From NCBI RefSeq assembly GCF_000150275.1, contig NW_002060944.1, positions 7,640,735-7,704,734 on the forward strand: a stretch of DNA of 64,000 nucleotides. The letters are read 5' to 3'. The stretch comes from Trichoplax adhaerens. Taxonomy: Eukaryota; Animalia; Placozoa. This document shows positions 1 to 53,070 of the stretch, one piece after another. A program made the translations under genes and the position numbers. Each line of letters begins with the position of its first letter. The first letter of the stretch is position 1. The notes beneath the pieces are model-generated. The model was not told the origin of the DNA. It saw only the letters and a list, made by a program, of their open reading frames with translations, and searched no databases.

Positions 1-487
1 CGTTCGCAACTGTCGCTTATACCACAAAATAAGTACTACCATTGGAGTATTATAGTTATTACCGTATCCTGTCATACGTTTGAAGTGTCTTGTGCCATTA
101 ATGTATACTAATTTAGCTACTTTGACTAAGATGTGAATAAGAACAATATCGATTATAGAAATTCATTTATCAAGCAGAACATACTCTGTAGAGATTTAAG
201 AAGGCAATTGGACATTAATCTTCGTTCATGCAGAATACGAGTGACTACGCAAATTTCATCGTGATACGATACGTGATGTTGTAAGGTAAATTTACACTTC
301 GAACAATATCTCTAGCAGACTCTTCAAAATCACTTCAAGCTTGCTGGCCAAACAATATATTTGTATATCAAAAGGGGTTTAAATGGACCAAGCATATCAC
401 TAACCATGAGGATTACGTACATTGTATCCACATAATGCATATGTCAATCTACGTCTATGCGTATAACATTCCTAAATTTGCACTTAC

Positions 488-2636
488 CATGGAATATTCC
501 TAGCATGTACTGGTTCACTAAGTACAGTGCTATCAATTTTGGAAAAGTTGCGTACAACAAATTGTATCTTTGCTGCACCTTGGCTAGCGTTGGCTTTCAA
601 CTTATCTAAATCATCCTCGTTGCTGATCTCAGTGGTATCTGCAGTATCATTTTCTGCTTCCGGTGATGCAGGTCCATGGTTGCTATTACTATTAGGATGA
701 GGATAATTATCATCTATACAGCAAAGGAAAGAGTAAACAGCAACATTAAGACAAATTCAATACATAAACAAATGCAAACTCTAGTTATTGCTGTAAATGG
801 GTATCTCCCAATCAATCCGTTGCCCCCTACTGCTGAAAATTGATTTATCTGTTATGACGGAAATGCGATTTTAAATTAAATTCCATGTCAGCCAGTATTT
901 TAAAATCAGAAATGAACAAGAACAGCCAAGATTTTCCCTTATCAACCAGTTTTCTACAATTGGATTAATTAGGTGTAATGACTACAGCGCTACTTAGCAC
1001 ATTTTAATTACGAAATCAGCAATTCGATGATAAAGTGTCGATGTTACGGGCCAGGATACAAATATGGGTATTGATGATATTATGGCGCAGACAGTACCTT
1101 TAAGCAAGAGTCTGACAAAGGTGTGTGAAACTGCCATGAATTAGCTTGGGCTGTGAGTCAAGGAGAAGTAAACTATGAAAATAAGGCATGCAGTTTTTCA
1201 ACACTACCATAAGAGTAAGTTTACATCGTAATAAGAATAGCACAGGCAATGCAATTTATTGTCATATCTGCCTTTCCTATTTCATTCAATTGGGTTAGGA
1301 AAGAACTTTCAGTTGTAGAGTCGGTCAGTGTTGGTGGTATAGTCGTATGTAGGGTTGATAAGGAAGCAAAAAAAACAACAGTTTGCAAAGTGTGTCTAGG
1401 ACCAGTATTTTGTTCTCATTCTTTCTACTACTGTACAGTATATTACCAAATTAATTTTATCTTGTTTGGTCTACATTCTACAATACGCTCCGAATTTAGT
1501 GCCAATACTTATACCATGCTAGTAGTAATGTAATAGAATTGAGGAAGTAGGCTAATTATTGAAGAAAAAAATACGAGAAGCAATAACAGAATCCAAAATC
1601 TCATCTTGATGGCGTAAGTGATCTACATGGATGTACAATTGGATTGAAATGTCTGCGTCATAAAAATTGTATCAACGCATACACATAAATTGTATATATT
1701 ATTGTAGTGTGGAGTTGATTTTAAAATCTATCCAGTCGTAGTCATTCTTAGCTTTATAGTGCTTGTTCACACACTCCATCCTCGACAACAAATACAGCCG
1801 TGACTAGCAAACTGCTTGTTATTCTATAATGGATTTGACTTTTTTGTCAATACAGGAAAGTACTTGTATGTCCCCCCCCAAAGTGGCTGGTGAATAGCCA
1901 TTTGAGAAATTACACCTGTAGTCGGGGATGAAATTTTCTGTCAAGCAAATGATCCTCCACTGAAATGTTACTCTTTCTCATGGAGAGAAAAGAAGAGAAT
2001 TGCGGATAGTCTACTGTATCAATTTGATTGAAATGCATCAGCAGCTGGCTGGCTGCCATTGGAGTCTTTTTTGAAGGTGATTGAACGCTACGCTAGCCCA
2101 ATGGCAAGTTTGTAGTCATTTAATATAGACAATTGACTACTGGACGCGTACCAAAGATAGCCAAGCTACTGCAAATTGCTATCCCACAACAAAGGTTGAT
2201 CATGCTAATTGATGACTATAGGAGATCGCATACAATACTACGTAGGACTAGTATTATTATCATTGTTGAAATTCACGGACAAGACTAAGCTATAGTAAGC
2301 CCCAATGGAAGAGGTTTTCGTCAATAAGAGCTGTGATCGCGCAAAATAGATTGGATCCATTTTGACAGACAAGACTCTTGTTGATTTATGTACTAGCACT
2401 CCTTGAGAGATTGTATCCTCCTACTCTGGTACTACAGTGATGACTGTTGTAGTCCAAAAGCTGTAAATTAAGCGTCAACATAGTAAAAATACAACATCAA
2501 TCATGACAGGGATGGTAGTTGAAAATAGCATTGGTATACCTTCTCCTATTTCCATCGTCTCTTGATCACTCGCTTGATGATCATCTCCTTCAACCTCATC
2601 AAAATCATACGAACCGCTTTTCCGATTGTTTTCCAT
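488..2636 (-). CDS. USP7: Ubiquitin-specific protease 7 (HAUSP), 5' part; exons 2636-2540 and 713-488; gene continues beyond the left edge
   Basis: GT-AG splicing joins MENNRKSGSYDFDEVEGDDHQASDQETMEIGE to DDNYPHP...AKIQFVVRNFSKIDSTVLSEPVHARNIPW in phase. The end matches the start of the USP7 MATH/TRAF domain (human, recalled: [29 protein letters not shown]), preceded by an acidic disordered N-terminus. Confidence 0.88.
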
Positions 2637-2994
2637 TCTGCCTAAGCGAGCACTCTTAGACAGCAATTGCTTATGAGGGTGAAATACTTTGGAAACGTGT
2701 TTACTAGTAATACGTCCAATTGCGACTGAATTTTCTTTGCACACCACCAAAGGAAAAAAGAAAAGATTTCAATTGCAACTAACTACTAATTTTGGTCGAC
2801 ATGAAAGGAAATTAACTCAGCGACGAGCTCTCGCTCTTTTTCAAACAGATCCACTCAACTACAGTGCAAGGTCTTTCACAAGGACTGTAGAAGCACCGTA
2901 GTCTACTCGAGTAGACAGTATCAATCACTCAGGCGAATTGAATAGCGCTGTATACTGCGATGATATTTTGACCCTCGCTGTATGACATTAATAA

Positions 2995-3280
2995 TGTACT
3001 GTAAGACATGGACAACCGTACAGAAGTACACTTTTCCCTTTCAAGAAAAATGCTACTTTTCACTGTGATGGACTACAGTACACACTACTGTACACTCTAC
3101 ATTCAAAGGGGTACAATAGACCGCCATTATCCAATGGCCCATTTCTAGATTTTGTTTTCATTTTATTCAAAATGAAGACAAAATCTCTCCTTTTTGGCGG
3201 GGGGGAAAGGCTATGGTCTACAGTACAGTTCTCCATCACACATTTTATGGACAGTAGTACAGTAGTGTAGTGTACTCACA
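2995..3280. promoter_or_regulatory. Putative USP7 promoter, rich in TACAGTA/TACTGTA-type motifs
   Basis: About 350-650 bp upstream of the USP7 ATG: ctacagtacacactactgtac, ctacagtacagt, acagtagtacagtagtgtagtgtac. Function is inferred from position. Confidence 0.5.
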
Positions 3281-3552
3281 ATGGATGCTTACAATCATCA
3301 TAACAATCCACGACGATGGCGCATTCACTGCTGGACAGATCTAATGATGGTAGAGTAAACATGAGACAGCGTAAACCACTGGGATCATCGCTTGTTGCAA
3401 AAAAACTCTCCATTGGATTTGTTGTTATTTGGCTCAGTTGTTTATATCATCTATCAGGAAGATGGGGGAAAGTTGTCCCTCTCCCTCCTGCGGTTCGGTC
3501 TTTTTCTTACCTCAATACGTGTACATGGAATGCCTGATGTTGGATATTTTGC

Positions 3553-4044
3553 TACTACTCGCTAAAACTCGTATACGTGTATATCTAATTTGGTCATTAA
3601 AATAGCCCCCAAAATAGGTAATCGACTGTATACCGGGCTACCCAATTGTACGATGAAAGCGAACGGTTAACAGTGTGGCCCATTTTACTACGATGCGCTC
3701 AAACTCGTTAACGCATATGTACAGTATCTATTTAGTCATCAAAATAGCTAAAAGAAATAGGTAATCGACTGTATACCGGGCTACCCAATTGTACGATGAA
3801 AGCGAGTGGTTAACAGTGCAGCCCATTTTACTACGACGCGCTGAAACTAGTATATCTATTTTGTCATCAAAATAGCCAAAAAAAATAGGTAATCGATTGT
3901 ATTCCGGGCTACCCGATTGCACGATGATAGCGAGCGGTTAACAGTGCAGCCCATTTTACCACGACGCGCTGAAACTCGTTAACGCATATGTATCTATTTT
4001 GTGATCAAAATAGCTAAAATAAAATAGGTACTATATACCGGCTA
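3553..4044. repeat. Tandem repeat, ~128-143 bp unit, ~3.5 diverged copies
   Basis: Unit tatcta..gtcatcaaaatagc..aaataggtaatcgactgtataccgggctacccaattgtacgatgaaagcg..ggttaacagtgcagcccattttactacgacgcgctgaaactcg recurs at about 3582, 3725, 3853 and 3991 (last copy partial). Confidence 0.95.
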
Positions 4045-5100
4045 CAGACGCTAAAGAGATGTGAATGTATTAGTATTAGAAAAAAAGTATAACCGGCTTG
4101 ATCTGCATACTGGATCACGGACCATCATGTCCAACTCCTTTGCAGTAATGGATTCCAAATTGCGCACCGGTAGACACTAGACGTATTTTTTGCTTAGCTC
4201 CATGCCCTGTTAATCGTTCCTCAATTTCTTGCTTAAATTACTATAAATCTACAGACAAATTCACTATAAAGTATCTATTATAGCAAAGACATTTTAAAGC
4301 CATGAAGATAGTGAACGAATTGACTTCCAGTCAATAATACCGCATCCATACTGTACTTGTTGGAACGCAAACGGCTACAATATCTTACTCTTGGTATCAC
4401 AATAACAGCTGTGCTTTGACAGTATTAACTGATAAATGAGCAAATTTAACATCAATTGATAGAGACACACTTTAGACTCTTTATGACTATACTAGATTTA
4501 GAAGTAAATACGCACATGCACACCATGATTAGTGCCTACTTCACTAAATCGCTAGGAGAACTTTTCACTTTTCATCAAACAGCACACAATAGCTGCTGCC
4601 TAAACGTTCGCTCACTTTTACTCCCACAAGGATCCAATTTACTGCGTGGGAAAATGGTCCAATATTCCTAATCATTTGTCTCGAATGTCAATCGAATAGC
4701 TTCTTCTATCATAATCATCGAACGCATATTTTGGGAGATAGTTGGAGATTCGATTAAAATTCAACGGTAAAATCCTGCAAAGAACACCATCAGATATTTT
4801 CAGAGATCCATTTAATATTAATATACAGTAATAGGCCATCTGATTTTCTAATCGTATCATGTGCGACATAATTAAAGAGATCCTTAAAGAGGCAATATGA
4901 GTTATTCTTCTTAAAAGTAATGCGTTGCATATTGCAATAGCTTTAAAAAATAAGAATCTGAAATATAGAGACACGAAATAATACAAGGCAATTACAATCC
5001 TATCAATCGAAAATTGTACTTAAGAAAGTAATCAAACGAAAGTTGCGTGTCATTTATACCGTATCTTCAATATATTATACCGTATAGATGATCGTATATA

Positions 5101-5102
<2 letters not shown>

Positions 5103-5132
<30 letters not shown>
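5103..5132. repeat. (AT)15 microsatellite, probably in or near the HAPSTR1 3' UTR
   Basis: Directly visible dinucleotide run. Confidence 0.95.
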
Positions 5133-5136
<4 letters not shown>

Positions 5137-5819
5137 ATCATATATATATACAACAATACAAAGAAAATTAACACAGTACAACCGTACCACAGTGTCCGTC
5201 TACATGAGGTGCTTTAAATCAACCGAAAATATATCTTGAAACTTTACCGACAAATGATACCTCATACAGCATAATATTACAATATAAAATGCTATCCTCC
5301 TATTCTTCATACAGACTACGATATCAGTAACTTTTTAAATGATGCAAGACGGTCATATAAGCACACAGTTTCAATTACAGTACAGCATATATTACAATAA
5401 AATAACAGCGAAACCTCTTTTATATTGCACTTAAGTAAAGTAGATTTATCAGAACGTAATCGGATTGCAGGATAACAATTTTACATTTTACACGTATGTA
5501 TGGTGGAGCAACTACAATTCCCTCCTCGATTACAAGCATTTTATAATCTGTGAGAATGCGTTACTCATTGATCGCGTCTATCATAGCTTACGATAAAATA
5601 AAGACAATGTATATTAATAACTACATATTCGCGATTAAGCAAATCCGATGCAATAAAACTATAAAAGTAACATCAATGTAAGCAATGAAAAAGGTAACAT
5701 AAAAACCTACTAGTTTGCTGCCAGTATTGACGATATACAGTACGTGCATAGGGTACAACACATTATCCACTGTAGACATAGTCAATTATCTCGGTGGCAC
5801 TCGATATCATAAATGATTT

Positions 5820-8800
5820 CTAGTCAAATTCTAAACGGTATCGCTTCTGACTCGGAGCGGGACAGTCCATATAGTAATCGGCAAACGAAACTGATCGCTT
5901 CTTGCTACTACTGCTACTACTCTCATCGTTGTCTATCACAGCATCAACCTGGCTCGATGGAGTCATTCTGCGTCGATGTGAAGTTGGTGGAGGTGTTGCT
6001 AATGTGCTACTCCGCGAAAAGTTTGCTATAGAGCCGACATCATTGCCAGACGGGCATTCGGGACGTGATGGTGGCAACATTCCAGTAAGAAACCCGATAA
6101 TTTCCTCCCGCAATACCAAACGTCGTTTCTTTTTTAACCAGTTGACTAATTCTTTGGTACGACGCTGATAGCCACATTGTGTACCAAAATCGATCCCATA
6201 CTTGTAAGCATCCATGCCATCTGTTTAGACAATGATATAAAAGAAAAGATATTCAATGTACAGTACAACAACTAGGTAGAAGAATTCGACTACTGTATTT
6301 TCAGTCCTAATTCCAAGTGGCTATCCTATATCATCATGACACTGTACGATATCATTTTTTCCATCAAAAGATTCTTACACCAGTTCATTCCATATTGTCA
6401 CTCATCTTAGCTCAACACAACAATTACTAACTTTATCAAATTATAGCTTGGTGTATTTATTGTATTGATTGATTATTTGTCAGTTTCACGTTTAGTTCAA
6501 CACTTGTACAACAAAGCTAAAATGGGATAGCTTCGAGTAATATCTACACTAATTCATCCATTACAATACTCTAGTTTCTACACAACAATGAATATCATGG
6601 GTTAACAGTGAATACCTATGTAGAATCTACTGTAGGTATTGTAATAAGAATACAATATCCTTCAATATAAAAGAGTATTTTAGGACATTTTTATTTTATC
6701 TTTATGGTGATATACTCCCTGCATCGTGAATTTGTAGAGCAACACTTGAGAAAGACAGCGATACACCATCTACATACACTACAGAATAGACACTACACGT
6801 ACGTACAGTAGGAGAGAATGCAAAAGGTTCATCGCATCCTTTTCAAAGTTAAAATAACAATTTTAGTTACTTCGTTATTTAAGATAATAGCTAGACTACG
6901 GGTATCAATTTGCAATTGAAGTCTACGCTCAAACATTTCCAATTTTTTCATACGTGTCGACGTTTGCAGTAATTTCAATTTTAGTTCGGTACTGCTTATA
7001 AGCTTGTAGTCATTACAACGTTTCAACTCACTAACGCGTAAAGAAAAAAATTGTGTACATACCTATCTTAACAAGGCCCCACGTATAAACCCTGCATAAC
7101 TCTACATTAGGACTCACCACAACACAACGCACGATGATATCCCATTTTATATCATCGCGCCTTGTAATCAGTTCATTCTGCTATACATGAATTTGTTCAA
7201 TCCTAGCGAGAAATCAACTTTTACAGTATGTACAACATCTACCCATACGAACTGCGTAATACTGTCATTCATTCCAAATATGATTGAAAATTGAATTATG
7301 TACTATAACAAGAAACCCAATGATGGGCTACTACATGCTAGTATGCGTCTACTGTAGATGGATGTAGTGGTTTCATTACTCTATTTCAATGGACGCTATA
7401 AGAATCGCACAACATAGCTCACAGTTGTACAAGATGACATAAAAATGGCGTGTCGACCAGGTTAATCAGAAAAACGTATGTAGAACACAAACAACCCAAG
7501 ATGCAGTAGACGATATTTATAATAAATAATTCAATCTAGTTGACTTAATACACGATGTTGTCCAGTTTATCCTTGCGAAGGGTCCAACACATACTGTATG
7601 ACTAATGTGAGAAAAAAAACGTCCATTGCAAGGGTAAACAATCGAGCAAGCTATAAAGGAAGAAAACACTTGGGTAAATTGGTACAATATGGGAAGGGAT
7701 GAAAGAGTAAAATTACGTTCCGTTCTATTGCAATGGCCTAGAAGAATACCATATGAATAGTAAAGACCGTCACTTTCAAATGAAATATATCAAACATTTT
7801 CTTTCCCAAAATACGTCTTCACTGCACCGCGTATACGGAAGCAACTTTTAGCTACTTGAAACAAAGGCTTATGTTTCGCCATTGCTTGAACTACTAATGT
7901 GCAGCAACGGCGTACTCCTCAAGCGTCATTTGACTACAACTAGGGACTACTCAACAACTTATCGTATTTTTTTTTTTTTGCCCCTTTATCCAATTAATGG
8001 AAGTAGAACGTAGCAAGTTCAATTTCAAATTTCAATTCTAATTATTATCACAACAGGGAAAAAATTGGATTCAATACAGTCGTTACTGCTACAAGCTAGC
8101 ACGAACGTACTGATTGCCACTAAAACTGATCGTTCTAGGCCTATCATAGACATCCAATATTGGTGGTAAACTATTGGTAAGACCCAGTTCTTGACAAGAT
8201 ATGATCAACGCTAGAGTTGACAGGATTAATTTTTTGAATGTCCTTTGGCAAGGGTAACTACTACTGCCACGACCAGGAACTTAATTATTTGAAAAACATC
8301 CTGCCTGCTGCGACAATAACAGCAACACTAGACTGCCAATGAGCTAACTACCCGTCCTTGCTACACACTTTTTTGCCTATTGCTTTATATGGATGGAAAT
8401 ACAAGGATAAAGTACTGTCTAGAGTTGTCCAACGCCATTGCTAGCGATGTATAGCCTTCAACGTTGGTTGTTTACCAACTTCCCGTGGTAGAACAATAGG
8501 TAAGAAAAAGCAAAAGGAATCAAATGCGGTATAATGGTGTATGTTGGTAGCGCTACATGGTACACACTACAGTACTTGGCATCATGTAGCGTGGTGATTG
8601 CTAAGTCTGGTCTCGGATATAATTCAGGACTGATGATGGAAACGATGATAGTGGGCAATCGAGTTTGTGTGCACAAAATGGAATAGTAAATCCAACAAGT
8701 TTAAATTATTGACGTGTGTTGTACTTCTTTTTGGATAGAAAAGCTTTACTATGGATCAATGTGATGATCCACTTTTAGCAAGACTACAGAAGTCAAGTCT

Positions 8801-9344
8801 TTACTTTGTAAGGGCAATATATTATATATTACAGTATGACAAGACGTAGAAAATGGATTGTTGAAGTTTACTGTAGAGAAGATGATTGACAGTACCGTGA
8901 TAAAGTTTGGTGACAGAGTTGGAAGTAGACTGAAAATTGGTCCAAGCTCCTTCAGCGGTGCCATTACAACACTCTATAATATTGAAAATAGATCAAGGTG
9001 TTACCTCAATTCCACGCTGTAAAAGTGAAATGGAGATGATGAAATTTGAAAATACAATGTCATGTCCAACCTGTGAAAAGTTGAGCTACTGATGTTGCTG
9101 TTGATTGAAAACTAGAGTATAATGCTTGGCCAACTTTATCACTATCTTTGGATAATAATTCTTCTATGTCATTTTGTTTTTCGCCCTCTTCGACATGCGG
9201 CCGATCCATATCGCCACCATTCATGACTGTCAAGGTGGATGACGTTGCGAACTCGCCTTCCATTTGTTCACCCATTTCTCCATTTAAAGTAGTATTGGGT
9301 AAACCACCGCCTATCGACATGCTTTCATGATCTAATCTTTCCAT
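5820..9344 (-). CDS. HAPSTR1: HUWE1-associated protein modifying stress responses (C16orf72/TAPR1 homolog); exons 9344-9071 and 6220-5820
   Basis: Exon 1 ends LYSSFQSTATSVAQLFT (human LWHLFQNSATAVAQLYK). A phase-1 GT-AG splice leads to DGMDAYKYGIDFGTQCGYQRRTKELVNWLKKKRRLVLREEIIGFLTGMLPP (human IGIQIGYQRRNKDVLAWVKKRRRTIRREDLISFLCGKVPP). The C-terminus is bipartite-NLS-like: KKRS...SQKRYRL (human RKRT...HKRNRMI). Confidence 0.93.
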
Positions 9345-9644
9345 CGTCTATGCTTGTCCTCTTCGCCTACAGTGCAATATCGTCAATATTGTCGTATGCA
9401 AGTAATGGAATAGTATTTTGCGTCCAATGGAAGATGAGTGTACTACTGTACTTCTAGCAACGTTGCCTCTTTCTTAATCAATAGAAATCATTACGTTTCC
9501 TAATGAAATAGAATGCACGATCTTGTTTTACAAGCAGCTGTCAATGACTACAACTCCGAATCAACTAGTACGCTAATTTTTTCAGGGTTGTTTTTTAAAA
9601 AGTGCAAATTTCAAAATGGGTGCTGTAGTTTTCAGGTCGAGTTT

Positions 9645-10485
9645 AATTCCTAACCTTTGGATTACTGTATCCGCACACTACCACAGTACGGCAAAGCTTG
9701 TGTCCTATGGACTCCAATCCGCCCACACGGTGCAGTTTACTGTCTACAGTGTACAGTGTACAGTAAGTCATGGATGGTAGTGTCGTGTACTGTAGGCTAG
9801 AGTTGTGGACTGGTCTGGACCAGTCCGGTCCGGTCCAGTACGGTATACTGCAGAGTGGACGGTATCTCTTTCTAGGTCTGTAGTGCACCACTACATTAAT
9901 GAATAGACTAGACTGCACTGTACTGCATTTATTTACTGTACAGTCTACAGTATAGTGTACAGTACTGTGTGTACACCCCAGTCAAATATCGTGTCGGACT
10001 GTTCAACTTGTCAAAATCCATTCCACTGTTCTACAGTACAGTACACTGTCCACTACAATTCCACGCTGCACTGTGAATATTGTTAAGTCAAAACATACAG
10101 TTTACGTAGAATGAAAGCATACAGTATAGTACTGTACTGTATACAGGGGTCCGAGTGGTCTATCGGTGTCATATAGATCAGAACGGTTGGAACCGAACCG
10201 GACCGTATTCAGGTCTAATCGGTGACAGGACAGTACTTTGCTACAGTACCAAGGACGACGACTACAATACTGTACTAAATCAGTACTGTACTGTACACTC
10301 TAATAGAAGGAGAGTAATTGTACGAACGCAGTCACACCGTGTTAATCTCATACTAAACCTTATGCAACGACGCTAGGGTTCTAAGGTTGAAGGTTGAAGG
10401 CCTATCACTGCATCCAGCATCTCGCTCGCTCAATCAGACTCATCCGATCTGTACCGTACCGTACCGTACCGTACCGTACTGCAAC
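9645..10485. promoter_or_regulatory. Bidirectional promoter between HAPSTR1 and XPO6, dense in TACAGTA/GTACN/GGACC motifs
   Basis: The divergent ATGs at 9344 (-) and 10639 (+) are ~1.3 kb apart. The interval is packed with tacagt/actgta, ggaccagtccggtccggtcc (~9817-9837), gaaccgaaccggaccg (~10190-10205) and (gtacc)5. Confidence 0.7.
10451..10480. repeat. (GTACC)5 pentanucleotide microsatellite near the XPO6 5' end
   Basis: gtaccgtaccgtaccgtaccgtaccgtact is directly visible. Confidence 0.95.
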
Positions 10486-10638: not shown

Positions 10639-13600
10639 ATGGTAAGTTTTACTTGGCTTGCATAACGGATACCCCCTTCTTCAGCGCCAACTTATTACAA
10701 CGCCTTTCAATCAAAGCCATGCCATCTTCCAATCCTCTTGCTCATCAACGCGCTATCTTGACGTTGATCTTCTCTTATTACCAGCATTTTGCATATATTA
10801 TTCCACTGTAGTAGACGATCTTCTACGACTTCATCTTGATGAAGACTGTCTTGATCGTACTAACCTACTTCAACATCTACAATGTCTCTTGTTTTCTACC
10901 CTTGATTTTTCACTAAAACGACTGGACTGTACGCGTATGAATGATGACACCTCCAATCAGCATTTTGGGGAATTTCACTTTCTTTCGTCATCATTATCTT
11001 ATCTAAGCTGTCAAAATTCAATGCTCACTTTTGTATCCTGTCGTATTTTAGCCTAAAAGTTTTGTAGGATCAATTTCTCACTAGAGTCAACATCAATCAT
11101 CAACTGGATTTTCAGTGGATGGAATACTTTTTTACTTCTTTAGCATTTAAATTTGTTATCATTCACTTTGATTAATTCATCAACACTACAGTATCAGTTT
11201 ATCAACTTGACCTACCATCAGTGATTCATTTGGCAAAGTACGCAATACCTCAAGATCAATGATGATTACCGTTCTCATTCTGTTGCTGTATTATATTATT
11301 TTTTTAATGTTGACAATGAGATAAAGTCTCGGTCATATACCTATGCAATTTCAACGAAATCTTACAGCAATCTCATTGTGTACTGTAGCAGGGACTAGTA
11401 GATGTCGATATCTCACATCAACCCAATTATACTTTGTTGAAAGACTCCTATAATCACATAATGTGACAATTGTATTGCCAATGGACTGGCATAGACTTAG
11501 CTATCATCTTATCACCCAAAGCAAATAGCAATTCCATCTACATATCTTGAGCTTACCTGTCCTATATTAATCCTAAACTGTAACGGCTGTATGAATAACT
11601 TTTCAAGATATTGAGACATCATAATGACAATATCATGCAACTCCTATCTATTGTTTCTTTTTTTTCTTCATGGCTCCCCTCTCTTCAGTATTTCTACTAC
11701 AGCTAATTATACCTTCATACTGCACGTATATCGTAATTACGTATGCTTTTGTCCTAATCTATTTCCTATCTTCGCATTCGTTTAGCCTAATATCAACTTT
11801 TACTTTTGAAAATAAATATTGTACTCTATCAGGAAATAAGCAATTGTATTTGATGATATTCTTTCATTAAATTGAATTAATCAAGCCTTTTCAACGTATT
11901 TGAACATCCAGTGGGTTGTTTTGTAAGTGAATCGTATTAATGCTGTTATTAATTATTATATGCTTATTTTTTATTACACCTTAGAGTAATAACACCACCG
12001 GAGAGTCCTTAAATATACTTCAGCGTCTACTATCGGAATTTTACAATGTTCAAACAACCAACAAACGTAAAAGAGAAATCGGTAATATGATTGAACCTAT
12101 TACTCTAGTTTATCCCCTTCATTTCAAATATTTTCTACCATAGACTTGTGTAGCACTTCTACATGCATACAACAACAGCCAGATAGGGTATTCAGTTGTA
12201 AAAATACCTTTAACAATTTAATACTGTACTTTGTACGATGCAATTTGGCGTAAAAATTGGCTAACAAAATTATCACAACACATTTGCTCAATCAATCATA
12301 ACAAAGCTTAAAACTGGTATGCAGCGTAATGTATAATGCTACAACAAACTAGTACTGTAGGTATACGACAGCATCGTTTACTTCATGCTAGAATAATAAT
12401 ACAGTATCTGTAATGTAAAAATAATTACTCTTTCACTCTTTGCTATACGATTATGCACGCTATTATTATGGTATACAAACTTCTGAGCCACCTTACAAAA
12501 ATTATTTTTTACACATGTATCAAAGCTTCAACGCATATCAATAATGGTCCGTACAATCGTTGCACTTAAATCTTATGATCACTTTCATACCTTTTCAAAG
12601 TTGGAAAATAAATGGCTACGGGCATTTCAACCAATTTCAATTTTTTGGATATTATAGCATTATACATACTGTACAATATAGTCAAACGACATCGCTGTAC
12701 TGCAATTTCAATCAATCTTACTAACCATTACAATACCATTCTAAAAGAATACCTCTCGCAATTATCGTCATAAAGGTGTACTATTTTAACTTAATAAGGC
12801 ATATGTAATCTCTTATAGAACAATTGTTGGCGAATTTTAGCCAGCAGAAAGACGCATGGAGGCACTGCATTTGTTTTTTGAACGATTCTCAAGAACAGGG
12901 TGTTCTCATGTTTGCAACCAGAGTCTTAGAGGTTAGATTATATTTGTACCTTATTAATTAACTTTTACTTACATATTCTAACTACATATGTACAGTAGTA
13001 CAGTACTACAGAATATACAGTAATGCCTACTGTACGTAAGAAGTCAATGTTGCTGCTTGCGATAAAGCATACAATAGTAACATAGCCTTTTGTCACTTGA
13101 ACTGTTTAAAAATATATTCAATGAATAAACAGTTATAATAATAATTTTTAGGACATCGTTAACAAAAAATGGATTGGTGTGGATGCCAACGAAAAAAGAG
13201 AATTCCGTTCTACGTTACCTCGGTTACTTCTAGCAAAACGAACCGATTTTCCTATTTTTGTGCGTAATAAATTGGTTAAAGTGATAGTAGATATAGCTAG
13301 ATTGGATTGGCCACACTTTTATCCAAATTTCTTTAATGATATGCAAGAAGTAAGCGTTAAAAAATCATTTTTTTCCTCTGATGCAATAAATTATGCTGCT
13401 AACTGCTTTGTACAGTATATTGTGTATATCATGCAATACGCTATGTTATTGCAACATGCACAATATACTTGCCTACAATTTCAACCGTAATTGGCCATGC
13501 CCAAATACAGTAGTAGCTAATTTTGCTCTTGTTTTGTTCTATCAAGATAATTAGTGAACCTAGCACCACTAGCCTTGGCTTGTACATGTTATTGACAACC

Positions 13601-16600
13601 TCAGAGGAATTAATTCAACCTCGTGAAAACGTTATATATAGTCGAAAACTTGAATTAAAGAGACTGCTCTTGAATGAGGTGCCCAAGATCCTATCTATGC
13701 TATCAACTTTACTAGATTCATTATTGGATAAATATCAAGTTGCAAGACATATTACACCATCTACTTCTCCAACGTCATTACGACATAATGAAACTGGAGC
13801 GGTTGGTCTAGACCTGTTTTCGGTATCGCCATCATCATATGATCAAAACGATAACTCAACCACTGAAAACGACAATATTGTACAAAAATTACTTCGATAT
13901 ATGCCTTCTCGTCAAGCTAAATCTAGCATTCAAGCATGGAATGTAGAATCAAAAGAAATTGCCGCTTTGGCCTTACAATGTCTAGCTGATTTCTTTTCAT
14001 GGATTCCTTTGTCATCACTCATGACAACATCATTACTGACCACCATTTTTGGCTATGCCAGCTTCGGCTGTCAAACTGGTGATGGCCATCAGTTGGGAAC
14101 GTTAGCAATGGACTGTATAAATGAAATAGTTTCCAAGAATTGTGTTCCGGAAGAGTTCGAGGAATTCTTATTAAAATTATTTCAAGAAACATATCAATTG
14201 TTGCAAGATTTGGTCATTGGTCAAAATATCAATTTCGCTGATCTAGATGAAAAGTACTGTATACGCTTTTGTAATTATCGTAATTTAGGGCATACTATGT
14301 AAATGGCTATTCCTATTATTATGTTATATGTGTTACTACATACTACTACCAGATGTACATATATATATATGCGTACAGTATACATGTACAGAGTGTACAA
14401 GTATATCCGCACATATTGAAGTTCATGGTATATTGCACATAGATAACAACAATATTTTTTTTTTTGTGATTCTATAGGTATTTAGATAAATTTACAGAAT
14501 TTCTACGGCTATTTGTTAATGTTCACTTACAAAGATTTACAAACAGTCCATATTTTCCGCTATCAAGATTCTTCGAGCTTCTGTTTAAGTATACTTTCTT
14601 ACAGGTAATTAAAAAAAATAGAACTATGATTTTATAATACTTGATAGATAATATATCTCAACTGCCTGTATTTTATTCCCTAGCATCATTTAGATGGCTA
14701 TTATGCTTGCTTAGAAATATGGGAATTCTTTATTGAACACTTAAAAATGCAAATTAAGGCTGAGAGTAATAATCATGCAAAAGCAGAAAATATTATAAAG
14801 TAAAAACTAAAACTGAATTAGCACAGAAAAAAAGTTAACTCTCATCTCCCATATAATCTATACTAATGAACGGAATTTATTTCTATTTTAAATCAGCAAA
14901 TATCGGAGTATTCTTACCGTATTAGCTAGTAGTATTATCAAAAAGATTCAGTCCAGCAAAAATTATAATCAAATTGAGGCTCTTAGTAACGATGTAATGG
15001 ACGAAGAAGTTAGTATGCTTCAAGTTTCTTATCATATTAAGGGCCTTTTAAAACAGAAGAAATAACCCTGGAAATTTATCTTAAATTATTTTAGGACGAA
15101 ACAGATTTACAAGTATTTCTGAAAAATAACATTGAGATTATTGCCTCTATTTCTGAAATTCAACCGGAATCAATTCTTCAAACATTAGTATGTATTATTC
15201 ATTACTATGTAATAATAAAACAGTTATGATAGTACTCTGGTCGTTGTGTATATAAACTATTAACTGTAGTGATTGAATTTATTAGTTTGATATACTGAAA
15301 TCGCGATTCAGCATTTTTTCAAGTATCGAGCAATACTTAGTACAAAATGTTCAAGGTATGCGCTATAATGAAACTCACTTCACATAATCAACAATATACA
15401 ATGAATGTACTATAACTAACGAAAGTAATACATTCTAAATTTTTAAGGTCGATGTATAGAATTTCCTGATAATCAAGACGGTAACTATATAAAGCTGCAA
15501 TTTCACTGTGCTTTGAGAGATCTATCTACTTGCATACAAGCATTAGGCAGGATGTCTGAGCATTTTGTCGACGCTTTATTTATGGAAAGATTTCAAAACT
15601 GCAATACATTATTAGATGGGTAAATGCCACAGTTGATAGGACTGTAAAATTTCGAATCTTAAAACAGTATTACACTAATTAAAATAACACAGATCATATT
15701 AACATCGTTTTTTAGACTAACCCACGTCTGCTTTTTCGCCACGAAGCTACAACTATATAATATTAATTGTGAATCATCATTATTATCAACTATCATGGAA
15801 GTGTAAGTATCATTATTTGAAATAGAAAATTTTTAATCAGTATATCATCATTGCTTTCCTTTATTATATTGAAATTGTAGTCATATTCAATCTATGGCTG
15901 CAATTCAAGCCTTTAGCCCATGGTTGTGCCAATTTCACGCCCATAGTCAAGGACACATTGATCGCCAAAAAATGTTCTATTCGCTATTAAATCAAATTGT
16001 GGATGCTGTTATTCCTCTCTTGCAAAAATCCGCAAAAACGCCAGAAAAATTAGCGTATTGTGCCGCTTGTTTACTGTTAACCTTAGCAACAAGTATTAGA
16101 ACATCTATGTTACTAGATATTCGATCAATTCAAGATATGACCAACATGAATTCCGGAATTACAACCTTTGATTACCTTCCTCAAAAGGTATTATTGCAAA
16201 AAGTGAGGCGTATCAAGATAACATTTTATGATTAATACAGATATCCTTTTTAACAGGTTCAAGTCGTTATATTTAAGATGCTCTCAAATACTATAATTCT
16301 ACCCTGGAATGGTGTCAAAGATAGTGACCAGGTCTAAATATGCATATATATATAAGATTGTAATTAACTGCTGATCGATTCTGTCTCTAGAGATTCTAAT
16401 TTATCTATAAATTATCATTTTCACTCAGCGTTGGGAAGAACGCTCAGAGAAACATAGCAGTTTCGTAAGAAGCACAACATTGAGTCTTACTAACACCTTA
16501 CAGAATCAATCGATTCAACAAGACAGTAATCTAATAAGTCAAGGTAAGAGTGGATATTCGATTGCCTATCGATGTCGCTACGAAAGGCTTTTAAATTCTT

Positions 16601-18444
16601 TTACGCAAACAAGGGGTATCTCCTGTAACTAATTACATTCACATGAATTTTTTCCCAATAGCAGTACCAATGATCAAGAGTACGTTGATGGTGCTCTGTA
16701 GTATCACTGAGAGTGTCACGAATGAAAACATGAAATCGAAAACGATTACCTACAAATCAATAGAAAGCTCTATCCATAACATAATATCATCACTTTCTTT
16801 ATTTACACCATTTCCAGGTAGAACTGTAGTTCCTTTAGCCACAATGAAAAAGTCTCGCTTAGAAATTGAATGCCTTACGCGCTTGTATGATATTGATGCT
16901 ATCGTATAATATTAATATTATATTATGCAGATCTTATCAACGAAGTTATGGACCTTATCTATAGTCTTTTCAATGGGTTATTAAGTCAGTGTGGAATGGC
17001 TTTCGCTAAACAAATTTTAGAAACGTTCATGCACTTATTCTCGAAGTAAACCACATCATTTAAATATAAAATTAAACTTTATGTCAATTTTAAAGACTCT
17101 ACCTTGTAATTTTGCAGGCAACAATTATTTGATATCCTCAGTAAAGATGGAGGCAGGGAGCACTCATTCGTTGAAAAGTAAATTCAATTTTATGTAATAC
17201 GTATATGTGTCATATGGACAAATTTGTGAAAGATACTCTTAAAAATTTAGTTATGCGAATTCTAATCGAATTCTTGACTTAAAAAATACGAAAAGCTAAT
17301 CGTACCCTCAATTATGTATCTATGATAGGTTCATAAAAATTATCCAACTATTAGTCGTAAAGCCGGGCTCTGCCGTCAAGGAATTACTACCTAATATATT
17401 ATCCTTTTGTATGGATCAAGTATATCCATTAGCTAAAGAGGTATTAAAAGCATAGTTTAACCTCAGCAGCACATTCATGGTCTACTAACCAATTATTCTA
17501 TTTCAAAAGTTTCACCTTTTAGAGGTAAAATATGCCTTGATGGAGGTGTTATATCAATACCTGTCAAACAATTGGAGGTAGTAATATTCCGCTGTATGAC
17601 ACAATTAAATCACAGTACTACGAGTATTAATATCACATTTACTATTTATAACAATTGTTAATACCTCTTGATCAACTTTTTCTGTAGATATTTTTTCCCG
17701 TCAAACATGGATCAAAGAGAAGGCGATACTGTTAACAACCCTCAGCACTTTATGGCAATCATGCAGGTTAGGCTAAGAGTCGTTATTCACAGTGGCACGA
17801 ACGCTTTGTCGATCCTAAATCTAACAAATAATTACAATCATACGCGTCATTAGGTATTGGGTGAAGCATTTTTACAACCTGACATATCACTGTTTAAGCA
17901 AAGTTTAGAAATTTTGGATAATCTGAATAAGAAATGTAAATTATACGAAAAGGTAGTTCACAAAACTGCTATACACTTAGTGTCAAAGAAATTGTTTTTT
18001 TGGCATTTATACTATTTTTCTTAATATTTCTTTCAGCCTATTTTTCAGCAAGACCTATTATTTGAATTTATGAATGTACTATTTCATGCGCTGGTTGATA
18101 GAAGTCACGAATTATTACAGGAGGAAATGACATGTACTATTTATGCTATGGCATCAATAAGCTTTAGCACCTTTTATTCTGTTTACGTACCACAGATGAT
18201 ATCAAAATGTGAAATGTTAACTTCACATCAAAGAGAAAGATTACAAGAGAATCTTGGCAATAATACGGTAACGAAATTCTGATTTAATACTTATAGAGAA
18301 ATTGTCTTAACGATCCTATGAAATCTTTTCTAATTCTAGGATCTTCCGACTTTCGTTCAAAGTTTAACAATGATCGTTAGTGATTTAAGATACTATCAAC
18401 TATGTAATAATTCTCTACCGCCTGGTGTAATCTCCTTTGACTAA
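10639..18444 (+). CDS. XPO6: Exportin-6 (profilin-actin nuclear export receptor); multi-exon: 10639-10641 (ATG only), 11985-12081, 12819-12931, 13152-13349, 13547-14253, further short exons, last exon 18340-18444
   Basis: Spliced translation M-SNNTTGESLNILQRLLSEFYNVQTTNKRKREIEQLLANFSQQKDAWRHC...FVRNKLVKVIVDIARLDWPHFYPNFF...LGLYMLLTTSEELIQPRE...DLPTFVQSLTMIVSDLRYYQLCNNSLPPG matches recalled human XPO6 (TTNERKREIEELLNNFAQQIGAW; FIRNKLCKVIVDIGRQDWPMFY; DLRYYRLCNDSLPPG). Introns checked are canonical GT-AG. Confidence 0.95.
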
Positions 18445-51422: not shown

Positions 51423-52036
51423 GACGGGCTCGACTGAGTACCATGTCGTACAGTACTGTAGAAAGATTTCGGATATTGATATTTTGGCCAATATATTTTA
51501 TGACTACGTTAAAACTATTAGGCTGTATGTCATGCAACGTTCTAAAGTTTCTATACGTCAATTCTATATCAATCAATCGATTAATCAAGCAAAACAAGCT
51601 ATTCTACCTAATTCTACCAGCAGTAAGCAAAACTGGATTCGCATGGACCGGCCCGACTGATGCACAAAGTCGTCCAGTACATACTGTAGAAAGATTTCGG
51701 ATATTGATATTTTAGCCAATTTACTTTATGACCACTTTAAAACTATTAGGCTGTATGTCAAGCAATGATCTAAAGTTTCTATACATCAATTCTATATCAA
51801 TCAATCGATTAATCAAGCAAAACAAGCTATTCTACCCGCAGTAAGCAAAACTGGATTCGCACGGACGGGCTCGACTGATGCACCATGTCGTACAGTACTG
51901 TAGAAAGATTTCGGATATTAATATTCTCGCCAATTTACTTTATGACTACTTTAAAACTATTAGGCTGCATGTCATGCAATGATCTAAAGTTTCTATACAT
52001 CAATTCTATATCAATCGATCGATTAATCAAGCAAAA
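51423..52036. repeat. Tandem repeat, ~220 bp unit, ~2.8 copies
   Basis: gacgggctcgactga...tactgtagaaagatttcggatatt...aaaactattaggctg...tctaaagtttctata...tcgattaatcaagcaaaa starts at 51423, 51646 and 51864. The ORFs at 51443 and 51885 are near-duplicates for this reason. Confidence 0.96.
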
Positions 52037-52419
52037 GTTGGATTGCCATGGAGCTTCGTCACCATGACTATTAAGATAGGATTTGAGCTAACCATGGTAA
52101 GCATCTGTTGCACCAGCCATGCCCTACCCTACAGTTTCCTTGCCATTGCAATATGAGCTTTTTCATAGAAAAGGCTATAGCCTGGCTATTGACTTTGAAC
52201 ACAGTACTATCCATATTGGACTGTCTCTGACGTGTATCACTCATCATACTATCTATAGCCGTAGTGTCAGCGGTTCCTTTGTTTCATTGTTTGAAAATGG
52301 TTCGAATGGCATGGGAGTTGATGCGAGTGGATGGGGACAACCGTCATCGCGTCAGTCATCATTCCTACAGCCGTGGGCGAGTCATTTCCAAAGATGATGT
52401 CACCTGTAGCGATTGACTT

Positions 52420-53070
52420 GCTACTCTACTGTACTGTACAGTACGCTATACGGTACACTGTACACTGTAAACTGGACAGAATAAATTATATAAATTAAAT
52501 TATAAATTAATTATACTGTACAGTAAACTTTGGTACAGTTTACACTACTATAATGTGGTGATATAACCGCTAATTTGGATGGCAATCGCGGATAATGGAT
52601 TATTTCAGACATAGTACTGTACACCAGTCAGTGGGCTATATGGTAGACAGACTCATATCATCATCATTGGCGATTTTATAAAATTCATTCATCGTGCAGT
52701 AGACATTGGTCCGAATCCTGCAGTACAGTACAGTACGTACAGAGTGGACTGTACTGTACACTGTACTGTACAGTATACTGTACTGTAGAGTACTGTACTG
52801 TAGCTGACCTACATCGCTATGGGTGACATCTTTTTTACTCAGGCTATACGATACAGTAGTGGTCAGCGGAAATACTCATGTCTGATCATGATGAAGTACA
52901 GTACTGCACACTGTGGACTGCATACTGTAGTTGGCCTGCATCGCTATGGGTGACATCTTTTTTACTCAGGCTGTACGATACGGTACCGATCAGCGGAAAT
53001 ACTCATGTCTCGTCATGACGAAAACGGAAGATGTGTACCAGACCGTACCAGTTGTAACGGTACTAACGGT
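52420..53070. promoter_or_regulatory. Putative Sidekick promoter with a dense TACAGTA/TACTGTA/GTACC cluster
   Basis: ctactgtactgtacagtac (~52426), cagtacagtacagtacgtacag...ctgtactgtacactgtactgtacagtatactgtactgtag (~52721-52788) and gtaccagaccgtaccag (~53035). It lies ~1.2-1.8 kb upstream of the signal-peptide exon; a possible 5' UTR donor is at ~53469. Confidence 0.55.
52796..53022. repeat. Direct tandem duplication, ~127 bp period, 2 copies
   Basis: catcgctatgggtgacatcttttttactcaggct.tacgatac.gta....tcagcggaaatactcatgtct..tcatga.gaa occurs at 52812 and 52939. Confidence 0.93.

What the first reader, a model, noticed from the sequence alone, without database searches (positions are those of the whole stretch)
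488..9344. USP7 and HAPSTR1, two members of one HUWE1 ubiquitin module, are adjacent here as at human 16p13.2
Seen: HAPSTR1 lies directly upstream of USP7 on the same strand (HAPSTR1 stop 5820, USP7 ATG 2636), with no gene between. Established: human USP7 and C16orf72/HAPSTR1 are near neighbours on 16p13.2, in divergent orientation as recalled. HAPSTR1 binds HUWE1 and has been linked physically and functionally to USP7. Inference: the pair may have stayed linked since early animal evolution despite an inversion, which would suggest a co-regulated ligase-adaptor/deubiquitinase locus. The HAPSTR1 tail also has P/AxxS motifs (PPTS, PAPS) of the type bound by the USP7 MATH domain, though such short motifs arise easily by chance.
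Basis: partly seen in the sequence, partly recalled or inferred. Interest (0 to 1): 0.8.

Follow-up and report, generated by a model that had tools for sequence, protein, structure and literature searches.

The report
Ancient USP7–HAPSTR1 neighbour gene pair
In this placozoan (Trichoplax) genome the deubiquitinase gene USP7 and the gene for its partner protein HAPSTR1 sit side by side, and the same two genes are also direct neighbours in a sea star, a brachiopod, an oyster and humans, so the pairing is an old animal gene linkage and not a coincidence.

Summary
On the minus strand there is a three-exon, single-copy, expressed HAPSTR1 (9344-5820). It is followed 3.2 kb downstream by the first two exons of a genuine USP7 (ATG 2636, MATH exon ending at 488). 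The rest of USP7 lies just off the window. No recognisable gene lies between them.

The genome is Trichoplax adhaerens. I looked at 10-kb flanks around HAPSTR1 orthologues in other animals.
- USP7 is the direct neighbour in Patiria, Lingula and Saccostrea. There the genes are head-to-head, with only 255-707 bp between the gene ends.
- USP7 lies 6-10 kb away in two unnamed eukaryote assemblies.
- USP7 is absent from the flanks in amphioxus, a hemichordate, a scorpion and a termite.
- Human adjacency is published.

The linkage therefore predates the placozoan-bilaterian split. It fits the known class of conserved microsyntenic, bidirectional-promoter pairs. Trichoplax has a rearranged tandem version with separate transcripts.

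Co-regulation is plausible but untested. The P/AxxS motifs occur at chance frequency and are not conserved. I found no paper that reports the deep conservation. Interest is moderate.

The parts
9071..9344 (-). HAPSTR1 coding exon 1 (ATG at 9344; includes the first FQxxAxxVxxLF repeat)
   Evidence: ORF and Pfam PF15251 positions 6-45. GT donor at 9070-9069. 100% tblastn match to P0002 residues 1-91.
8896..8973 (-). HAPSTR1 exon 2 (26 codons; the second FQxxxxxVTxLY repeat, which carries residues equivalent to the human HUWE1-binding residues F90 and L100-Y101)
   Evidence: AG/GT splice sites, and the joined translation equals P0002. RNA contig loose ends at 6221 read into the end of this exon in 3 RNA runs. 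The human residue list comes from PMC9834230.
5820..6220 (-). HAPSTR1 last coding exon (conserved GxQRR...WxKKxRR core, disordered tail, C-terminal KR-rich motif, stop at 5822-5820)
   Evidence: Pfam PF15251 at 52 bits, E 1e-13. Genome scan at 48 bits. Alignment with 14 orthologues.
5151..5819 (-). HAPSTR1 3'UTR, at least this long. Lower-depth RNA contigs continue to about 3892 beyond a (TA)n repeat at 5093-5150.
   Evidence: RNA contigs 5151-6221 in X4 and X6, and 5378-6221 in X5. Weaker contigs cover 3892-5092.
2734..5150 (.). Spacer between the two genes. It has no recognisable gene. It holds a repeated element around 3600-3850 and an ACTGTA/TACAGT word cluster at 2734-3300, just upstream of USP7.
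   Evidence: No Pfam hits for its ORFs, no Rfam match, almost no RNA coverage at 2800-3890, hexamer density 14 per kb against 2.6 per kb for the window.
2540..2733 (-). USP7 exon 1 (5'UTR from about 2733; ATG at 2636; 32 codons plus 1 nt)
   Evidence: An RNA contig covers exactly 2540-2733 in three RNA runs, and the joint 2540/713 has GT..AG ends on the minus strand. Sequence.
714..2539 (-). USP7 intron 1. The part 1318-2569 is itself covered by RNA contigs.
   Evidence: The joint skips 1826 nt. Contigs 1318-2569, 1335-2569 and 1405-2569 appear in the RNA runs.
488..713 (-). USP7 exon 2 (acidic N-terminal linker and the first strand of the MATH domain, AKIQFVVRNFSKIDSTVLSEPVHARNIPW)
   Evidence: The top 11 PDB hits are all the human USP7 MATH domain at the matching position, though E is only 0.09 for this short piece alone. 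RNA loose ends at 487 continue into RIMLMPRHSG...GFFLQC, found 386 bp below the window start.
9345..10350 (.). HAPSTR1 upstream region, shared divergently with a plus-strand exportin-like gene. It holds a dense ACTGTA/TACAGT word cluster.
   Evidence: 22 hexamer hits per kb against 2.6 per kb for the window. Sequence. Plus-strand ORFs at 13179-18282.

Best explanation
The two genes are the true, expressed Trichoplax adhaerens orthologues of USP7 and HAPSTR1 (C16orf72/TAPR1). Their adjacency is inherited from an ancestor older than the placozoan-bilaterian split.

In the bilaterians sampled, the pair is transcribed divergently from a shared, CpG-rich intergenic region of less than 1 kb, that is, a bidirectional promoter. 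The most likely mechanism of retention follows from this. A chromosomal break in so short a shared promoter would damage one or both genes. The shared promoter would also co-express a deubiquitinase with the HUWE1 adaptor whose stability it controls.

In the placozoan lineage a small local inversion turned one gene. The pair is now in tandem (HAPSTR1 first, then 3.2 kb, then USP7), and each gene has its own start site and transcript.

Shown: gene identities, expression, splicing, adjacency here and in three other phyla, and loss in several lineages. Inferred: common ancestry of the arrangement, the bidirectional promoter as the constraint, co-expression, and the inversion.
For: Identity of the genes:
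- HAPSTR1.
- USP7.
- The genome is T. adhaerens. TRIADDRAFT_53768 sits on a 9,739,543-bp contig, which is the length of the window's contig.

Expression and separate transcripts: splice joints and contig extents in three RNA-seq runs.

Synteny:
- Patiria miniata: USP7 (1115 aa; MATH, UCH, USP7_ICP0_bdg, USP7_C2) head-to-head with HAPSTR1, 707 bp apart.
- Lingula anatina: 581 bp apart.
- Saccostrea echinata: 255 bp apart.
- Two unnamed eukaryote assemblies: USP7 lies 6-10 kb from HAPSTR1.

Chance expectation for two named genes being direct neighbours is roughly 2/N. With my recalled figure of about 11,500 Trichoplax genes, that is about 2e-4 genome-wide. It is a few per thousand if both genes lie within one ancestral linkage group.

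Promoter features: the shared intergenic regions have CpG o/e of 0.95-1.21, against 0.34-0.77 for their loci. They share five 8-mers, against 0.9 expected from shuffles.

Functional link: USP7 binds and stabilises HAPSTR1 and is its second-strongest DepMap co-dependency (PMC10921065 and PMC11148184). A HUWE1 orthologue is present in Trichoplax on another contig.
Against: - The pair is not within 10 kb in Branchiostoma lanceolatum, Ptychodera flava, Centruroides, Cryptotermes or one unnamed assembly. Any constraint is therefore breakable.
- In Trichoplax the genes share no promoter. In humans, from memory, they are more than 100 kb apart. Adjacency thus persists without the proposed constraint in two lineages.
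- Only 10-kb flanks and about ten taxa were examined. No named cnidarian, sponge or ctenophore was sampled.
- The ancestral orientation cannot be polarised without an outgroup.
- Co-expression was not measured. Contig depth cannot rank expression.
Confidence: 0.75

Rival explanations
1. The linkage is ancient but retained passively. The two genes began as close neighbours. They stay together in slowly rearranging genomes (placozoan, brachiopod, oyster, sea star, vertebrates) only because few breaks have fallen between them. There is no selection for co-regulation, and the shared pathway is incidental.
For: The pair is lost in several lineages without loss of either gene. In Trichoplax the pair is tandem with separate transcripts and a 3.2-kb spacer. 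Trichoplax, Lingula and oysters are, from general knowledge, known for conservative gene order. Hundreds of unrelated conserved pairs exist (PMC3514665).
Against: There is sub-kilobase head-to-head spacing in three phyla. The two products interact physically and functionally. In Trichoplax an inversion with breakpoints right at the pair still left the genes adjacent.
Confidence: 0.2
2. The Trichoplax adjacency arose independently by chance rearrangement and is not homologous to the bilaterian pairing.
For: The orientation differs (tandem against divergent). The flanking genes (CANT1-like, exportin-like) are not shared with the other loci.
Against: The prior probability of two named genes becoming direct neighbours is about 2e-4 genome-wide (calculated from my recalled gene count of about 11,500). 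Two further divergent, unnamed eukaryotes also keep the genes within 10 kb.
Confidence: 0.04
3. Assembly or annotation artefact: the two genes are not really contiguous or not in this orientation.
For: This is an older draft assembly. Independent contigs break at repeats around 3620-3800 and 5093-5150.
Against: The window has no N runs. Contigs from independent runs (X1) tile 400-6399 at 99% identity, with breaks only at short repeats. RNA contigs give consistent strand and structure for both genes.
Confidence: 0.01

Closest known systems
Human USP7-HAPSTR1 (C16orf72) locus at 16p13.2
   Same: The same two orthologous genes are direct neighbours. They are co-amplified in cancers, and their products interact: USP7 stabilises HAPSTR1, and both act with HUWE1 on p53 and stress signalling (PMC11148184, PMC10921065).
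   Different: From memory, the human genes are divergent and more than 100 kb apart. In Trichoplax they are tandem on one strand, 3.2 kb apart, in a compact genome. Trichoplax HAPSTR1 lacks the central DLQPFREALA..GLNGAMA motif seen in bilaterian orthologues.
Conserved ancestral microsyntenic pairs (CAMPs; Irimia et al. 2012, PMC3514665)
   Same: A non-paralogous gene pair is kept adjacent in at least four major metazoan lineages. It belongs to the head-to-head, short-spacer class attributed there to shared cis-regulation.
   Different: I could not check whether this pair is among the 595 listed, because the supplements are not held. Unlike most CAMPs, the two products here are documented direct interactors in one pathway.
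Mammalian bidirectional (head-to-head, under 1 kb) gene pairs such as SERPINI1-PDCD10 or PREPL-C2orf34
   Same: In Patiria, Lingula and Saccostrea the gene ends are 255-707 bp apart, and the region between them is CpG-rich.
   Different: This does not apply to the Trichoplax copy itself. Promoter sharing in the invertebrates is inferred from annotation, not tested.

Membership tests
HAPSTR1 / TAPR1-like (Pfam PF15251) | Significant match to the family profile above the curated cut-off | tested here: met
   52.2 bits against a cut-off of 27 on the last exon alone. Exon 1 adds 20 bits. The genome scan gives 48 bits.
HAPSTR1 / TAPR1-like (Pfam PF15251) | Two FQxxAxxVxxLY repeats, a GxQRR...WxKKxRRxxxRExLxxFLxG core and a C-terminal RKR...PxxKRxR motif. 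Human HUWE1-binding residues are F90, AA93-94, LY100-101 and G119. | tested here: met
   The alignment of 15 orthologues has invariant G134, Q136, W145 and K148. F, LY and G are conserved, and AA is replaced by T-S. The residue list is from PMC9834230. Binding itself was not tested.
HAPSTR1 / TAPR1-like (Pfam PF15251) | Expressed, correctly spliced, single-copy gene | tested here: met
   The exon 2-exon 3 junction and 3'UTR appear in three RNA runs. There is one locus in the genome.
USP7 / HAUSP orthologue | N-terminal MATH domain followed by a UCH catalytic domain with the Cys box | tested here: met
   The MATH start in exon 2 matches human USP7 residues around 64-96; the top 11 PDB hits are all USP7, with E 0.09 for the fragment. 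The next MATH exon is joined to it by RNA. The UCH Cys-box exon [20 protein letters not shown] has E 1.6e-8.
USP7 / HAUSP orthologue | USP7-specific C-terminal UBL region (USP7_ICP0_bdg PF12436 and USP7_C2 PF14533), colinear on the same strand | tested here: met
   PF12436 exons total 61 bits with neighbours and are the only locus in the genome. Three PF14533 exons score 19-22 bits each, individually below the cut-off but colinear.
Conserved ancestral microsyntenic pair (criteria of PMC3514665) | Non-paralogous genes with at most 4 intervening genes in at least 4 major metazoan lineages | tested here: met
   Placozoa (this window), Echinodermata, Brachiopoda, Mollusca and Vertebrata (literature). 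The pair was not found within 10 kb in Cephalochordata, Hemichordata or two arthropods.
Bidirectional-promoter gene pair | Head-to-head orientation with under 1 kb between transcription starts | tested here: not met
   In Trichoplax the genes are tandem, with the USP7 start near 2733 and the HAPSTR1 ATG at 9344. The feature is met in Patiria, Lingula and Saccostrea.
USP7 MATH-domain substrate (P/A/E-x-x-S docking motif) | A conserved or enriched P/AxxS motif in HAPSTR1 | tested here: not met
   Trichoplax has 5 motifs against 3.0 +/- 1.4 in shuffles. PPTS and PAPS are not positionally conserved. PAPS overlaps the SPxHKR motif, which lacks the serine in other species. Binding may use another surface; this was not testable here.

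The most novel reading that the evidence does not exclude
USP7 and HAPSTR1 form a selected two-gene functional unit in animals: a deubiquitinase and the HUWE1 adaptor it stabilises. They have been kept physically linked for more than 600 million years so that their dosage stays coupled. Ancestrally this worked through a shared bidirectional promoter carrying a conserved ZNF143/Staf-like site. In Trichoplax, after an inversion, it may work through two promoters that both carry the same ACTGTA word cluster. That would make this one of the few deep microsyntenies in animals explained by the biochemistry of the two products rather than by developmental enhancers.
Probability: 0.3. Interest if true: 0.7.

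Novelty: new member of a known kind. Interest (0 to 1): 0.5.

Why it matters
HAPSTR1 was characterised only recently. Its relation to USP7 rests on human cell-line co-dependency, co-IP and stability assays.

Finding the two genes as neighbours in a placozoan, an echinoderm, a brachiopod and a mollusc gives independent evolutionary support for a real functional coupling. In the three bilaterians they share a promoter-sized spacer. The finding also bears on the human 16p13.2 co-amplification and copy-number variants. There USP7 and HAPSTR1 always change together, and their separate contributions are hard to tell apart.

It offers compact invertebrate promoters of 255-707 bp in which co-regulation can be tested directly. 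For comparative genomics it adds a case where conserved microsynteny links two direct protein partners.

Tried and rejected
- The word-based protein search with the last exon and with P0002 found only placozoan sequences. I needed the exhaustive representative search and a third word search seeded with the sea-star protein.
- The look-up of encoding contigs did not serve the T. adhaerens record or Owenia. One unnamed assembly came without DNA.
- I first built a two-exon HAPSTR1 model of 224 aa. I rejected it once P0002 and the RNA loose ends showed the 78-nt middle exon.
- The 309-aa JGI model TRIADDRAFT_53768 has two extra exons that the RNA contigs do not support.
- P/AxxS motifs as MATH-docking sites: rejected as chance.
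- Inverted repeats flanking HAPSTR1 as inversion footprints: only one 21-nt pair (3080-3100 / 9950-9970), made of the common ACTGTA words. This is not convincing.
- Extended synteny: the Trichoplax flanks (CANT1-like, exportin-like) are not shared with the other loci. An ANKS4B/USH1G-like third gene was not found in Trichoplax with the query used.
- Literature searches for a prior report of deep USP7-C16orf72 synteny found none. The supplements of PMC8851819 and PMC5429095 do not list the pair. The Irimia 2012 supplements are not held.
- The taxa behind ERZ18545498, ERZ19433661 and ERZ26168041 could not be identified.
The exons were joined only inside a local script to compare the translation with P0002. 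Full-length searches used the database protein P0002, which is identical to the spliced translation.


Full report
**1. What is in the window**

The window is G000:C1413:7640735-7704734 of a 105.6-Mb, 1414-contig genome. The HAPSTR1-family protein TRIADDRAFT_53768 of Trichoplax adhaerens sits on a contig of 9,739,543 bp, exactly the length of C1413. The genome is therefore T. adhaerens, a placozoan.

**2. HAPSTR1**

- Two minus-strand ORFs match Pfam TAPR1-like (PF15251). These are 9060-9344 (20 bits, profile positions 6-45) and 5820-6215 (52 bits, positions 76-135; cut-off 27).
- A six-frame scan of the whole genome finds this family only here.
- The exhaustive protein search returned a 250-aa Trichoplax sp. 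H2 protein, P0002. It is 100% identical over the last exon and revealed a 26-codon middle exon.
- The model with exon 1 at 9344-9071, exon 2 at 8973-8896 and exon 3 at 6220-5820 has GT-AG at every junction. Its translation equals P0002 exactly.
- The exons were joined only in a local script for that comparison. Full-length searches used P0002.
- In three RNA-seq runs, contigs cover 5151-6221. Their loose ends at 6221 read into the end of exon 2, which confirms the exon 2-exon 3 splice and a 3'UTR of at least 670 nt.
- The older 309-aa JGI model has two further exons (8193-8110 and 7162-7034) that these contigs do not support.
- Aligned with 14 orthologues, the protein has both FQxxAxxVxxLY repeats, the GxQRR...WxKKxRR core and the C-terminal KR-rich motif. 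It lacks the central DLQPFREALA..GLNGAMA block of bilaterians.
- Of the human residues reported as needed for oligomerisation and HUWE1 binding (F90, AA93-94, LY100-101, G119; PMC9834230), F, LY and G are conserved. AA is replaced by T-S.

**3. USP7**

- On the same strand, ATG 2636 opens a short acidic exon ending at 2540.
- Exon 2 (713-488) ends with AKIQFVVRNFSKIDSTVLSEPVHARNIPW. This is the start of the MATH domain. The eleven best PDB matches are all human USP7 at the matching position, although E is only 0.09 for this fragment alone.
- Three RNA runs show the 713/2540 joint, which is GT..AG on the minus strand. An exon-1 contig covers exactly 2540-2733, placing the transcription start near 2733.
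- Loose ends at 487 continue as RIMLMPRHSG. That peptide lies 386 bp below the window start and continues GFFLQC, as in human USP7.
- Further down the same strand lie the UCH Cys-box exon, other UCH exons, USP7_ICP0_bdg and USP7_C2. The first of these two USP7-specific families matches nowhere else in the genome.

**4. Between and around the genes**

- The 3.2 kb between stop 5820 and ATG 2636 contains no ORF with a Pfam match and no Rfam family.
- RNA coverage is nearly absent at 2800-3890 and low at 3892-5092.
- The two genes are thus separate transcription units.
- The window has no N runs.
- Downstream of USP7 lies a CANT1-like apyrase ORF. Upstream of HAPSTR1, divergently, lies an exportin-like gene. 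Neither is shared with the loci of other species.
- A HUWE1 orthologue (DUF913, UBM repeats) lies on another contig.

**5. Is the adjacency conserved?**

I took HAPSTR1 orthologues from the searches and fetched their genomic places with 10-kb flanks.

| Taxon | Result |
|---|---|
| Patiria miniata (echinoderm) | USP7 is the direct neighbour, head-to-head, 707 bp between gene ends |
| Lingula anatina (brachiopod) | Direct neighbour, head-to-head, 581 bp |
| Saccostrea echinata (mollusc) | Direct neighbour, head-to-head, 255 bp |
| Two unnamed eukaryote assemblies from ENA | USP7 exons lie 6-10 kb from HAPSTR1, convergently, with one to three intervening genes |
| Branchiostoma lanceolatum | No USP7 in the annotation or by tblastx within the flanks |
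| Ptychodera flava | No USP7 within the flanks |
| Centruroides | No USP7 within the flanks |
| Cryptotermes | No USP7 within the flanks |
| A third unnamed assembly | No USP7 within the flanks |

- In the three head-to-head cases USP7 has the full MATH, UCH, USP7_ICP0_bdg and USP7_C2 set.
- The two unnamed assemblies differ a good deal from each other (49-66% identity in neighbouring proteins).
- 'Not within 10 kb' does not mean unlinked.
- Human adjacency is stated in PMC11148184. Its divergent orientation and spacing of more than 100 kb are from my memory.
- Two named genes are direct neighbours by chance with probability of about 2/N. Using my recalled count of about 11,500 Trichoplax genes, that is roughly 2e-4 genome-wide, and a few per thousand within one ancestral linkage group.
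- Independent origin in five phyla is therefore not credible. By the criteria of Irimia et al. 2012 (PMC3514665) this is a conserved ancestral microsyntenic pair.

**6. How it probably works**

- In the three bilaterians the spacing is that of a bidirectional promoter. The shared region has CpG o/e of 0.95-1.21, against 0.34-0.77 for the surrounding locus. It shares more 8-mers across phyla than shuffles do (5 against 0.9).
- These 8-mers assemble into TCCCACAATG(C). From memory, this resembles the ZNF143/Staf site common at bidirectional promoters.
- The same element lies about 150 bp upstream of HAPSTR1 in Ptychodera and Branchiostoma, where USP7 has moved away. It is absent from Trichoplax.
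- A shared core promoter makes breakpoints deleterious and would couple expression of a deubiquitinase with the adaptor it stabilises (PMC10921065).
- Trichoplax shows a derived or alternative state, in tandem, explicable by a small inversion of one gene.
- Both Trichoplax upstream regions carry dense ACTGTA/TACAGT clusters: 14 and 22 per kb, against 2.6 per kb in the window. There is only one other such cluster in the 64 kb. This may be a general promoter feature.
- Co-expression was not measurable. Contig depths cannot rank genes.
- Passive retention in slowly rearranging genomes remains a serious rival for why the pair persists.

**7. Claims that fail**

- The P/AxxS motifs occur at chance frequency and are not positionally conserved.
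- No convincing inverted-repeat footprint of the inversion was found.

**8. Novelty**

- The human adjacency and the protein-level link are published.
- I found no paper reporting conservation of the pair beyond vertebrates. It is not listed in the held supplements of two synteny studies.
- The Irimia 2012 lists could not be checked.
- The phenomenon belongs to a well-known class, so this is a new member of a known kind and of moderate interest.

Noticed in passing
window 1318-2569 (USP7 intron 1): RNA contigs cover this part of the intron in three runs. Depths are 31-45 in X4 and X5 and 5-6 in X6, against 42-109 for the exons. The contigs are continuous with the end of exon 1, while 800-1317 has none. 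This could be intron retention, an intronic polyadenylated short isoform, or a nested non-coding transcript.
   Followed up: no
window 2734-3300, 9345-10350 and 52001-53000: The hexamers ACTGTA/TACAGT cluster at 14-22 per kb upstream of both USP7 and HAPSTR1, and at one other place in the window. The window mean is 2.6 per kb. This overlaps the motif family of another note of this scan.
   Followed up: partly
L004:9633, L014:9860, L015:9798, L005:9852, L009:9844: An element TCCCACAATG(C), which from memory resembles a ZNF143/Staf site, lies about 140-370 bp upstream of the annotated HAPSTR1 start in a sea star, a brachiopod, an oyster, a hemichordate and amphioxus. It was not found in Trichoplax, the scorpion, the termite or the two unnamed assemblies.
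   Followed up: partly
L014:16434-22723, L010:10848-12103, L012:11806-12977: An ankyrin+SAM gene lies directly downstream of HAPSTR1, convergently, in Lingula and in two unnamed eukaryote assemblies. Its SAM domain best matches USH1G and ANKS4B. This suggests an older three-gene block USP7-HAPSTR1-ANKS4B/USH1G. From memory, human ANKS4B is also on 16p. The gene was not found in Trichoplax with this query.
   Followed up: partly
window 7034-7162 and 8110-8193: The public 309-aa model TRIADDRAFT_53768 includes two extra exons inside HAPSTR1 intron 2. The RNA contigs do not support them. The 250-aa model identical to the Trichoplax sp. H2 protein fits the data.
   Followed up: yes
window 3600-3850: A roughly 70-nt element occurs twice about 170 bp apart in the spacer. 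DNA-contig depth rises there (139 against about 80), and contigs break there. It is probably a multi-copy repeat.
   Followed up: no
L009:1-505: In amphioxus the gene about 10 kb upstream of HAPSTR1 is a different deubiquitinase of 520 aa (zf-UBP plus UCH, USP3-like), with an SDR gene in between. It is not USP7.
   Followed up: no
G000:C1411:1834917-1843872: The Trichoplax HUWE1 orthologue (DUF913 at 275 bits, three UBM repeats) lies on a different contig. The third member of the module is therefore not linked to the pair.
   Followed up: partly
L002:2700-3755 and window 13179-18282: The neighbours of the pair in Trichoplax are a single-exon CANT1-like apyrase ORF (351 aa, minus strand) beyond the 3' end of USP7, and an exportin-like multi-exon gene on the plus strand, divergent from HAPSTR1.
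   Followed up: no
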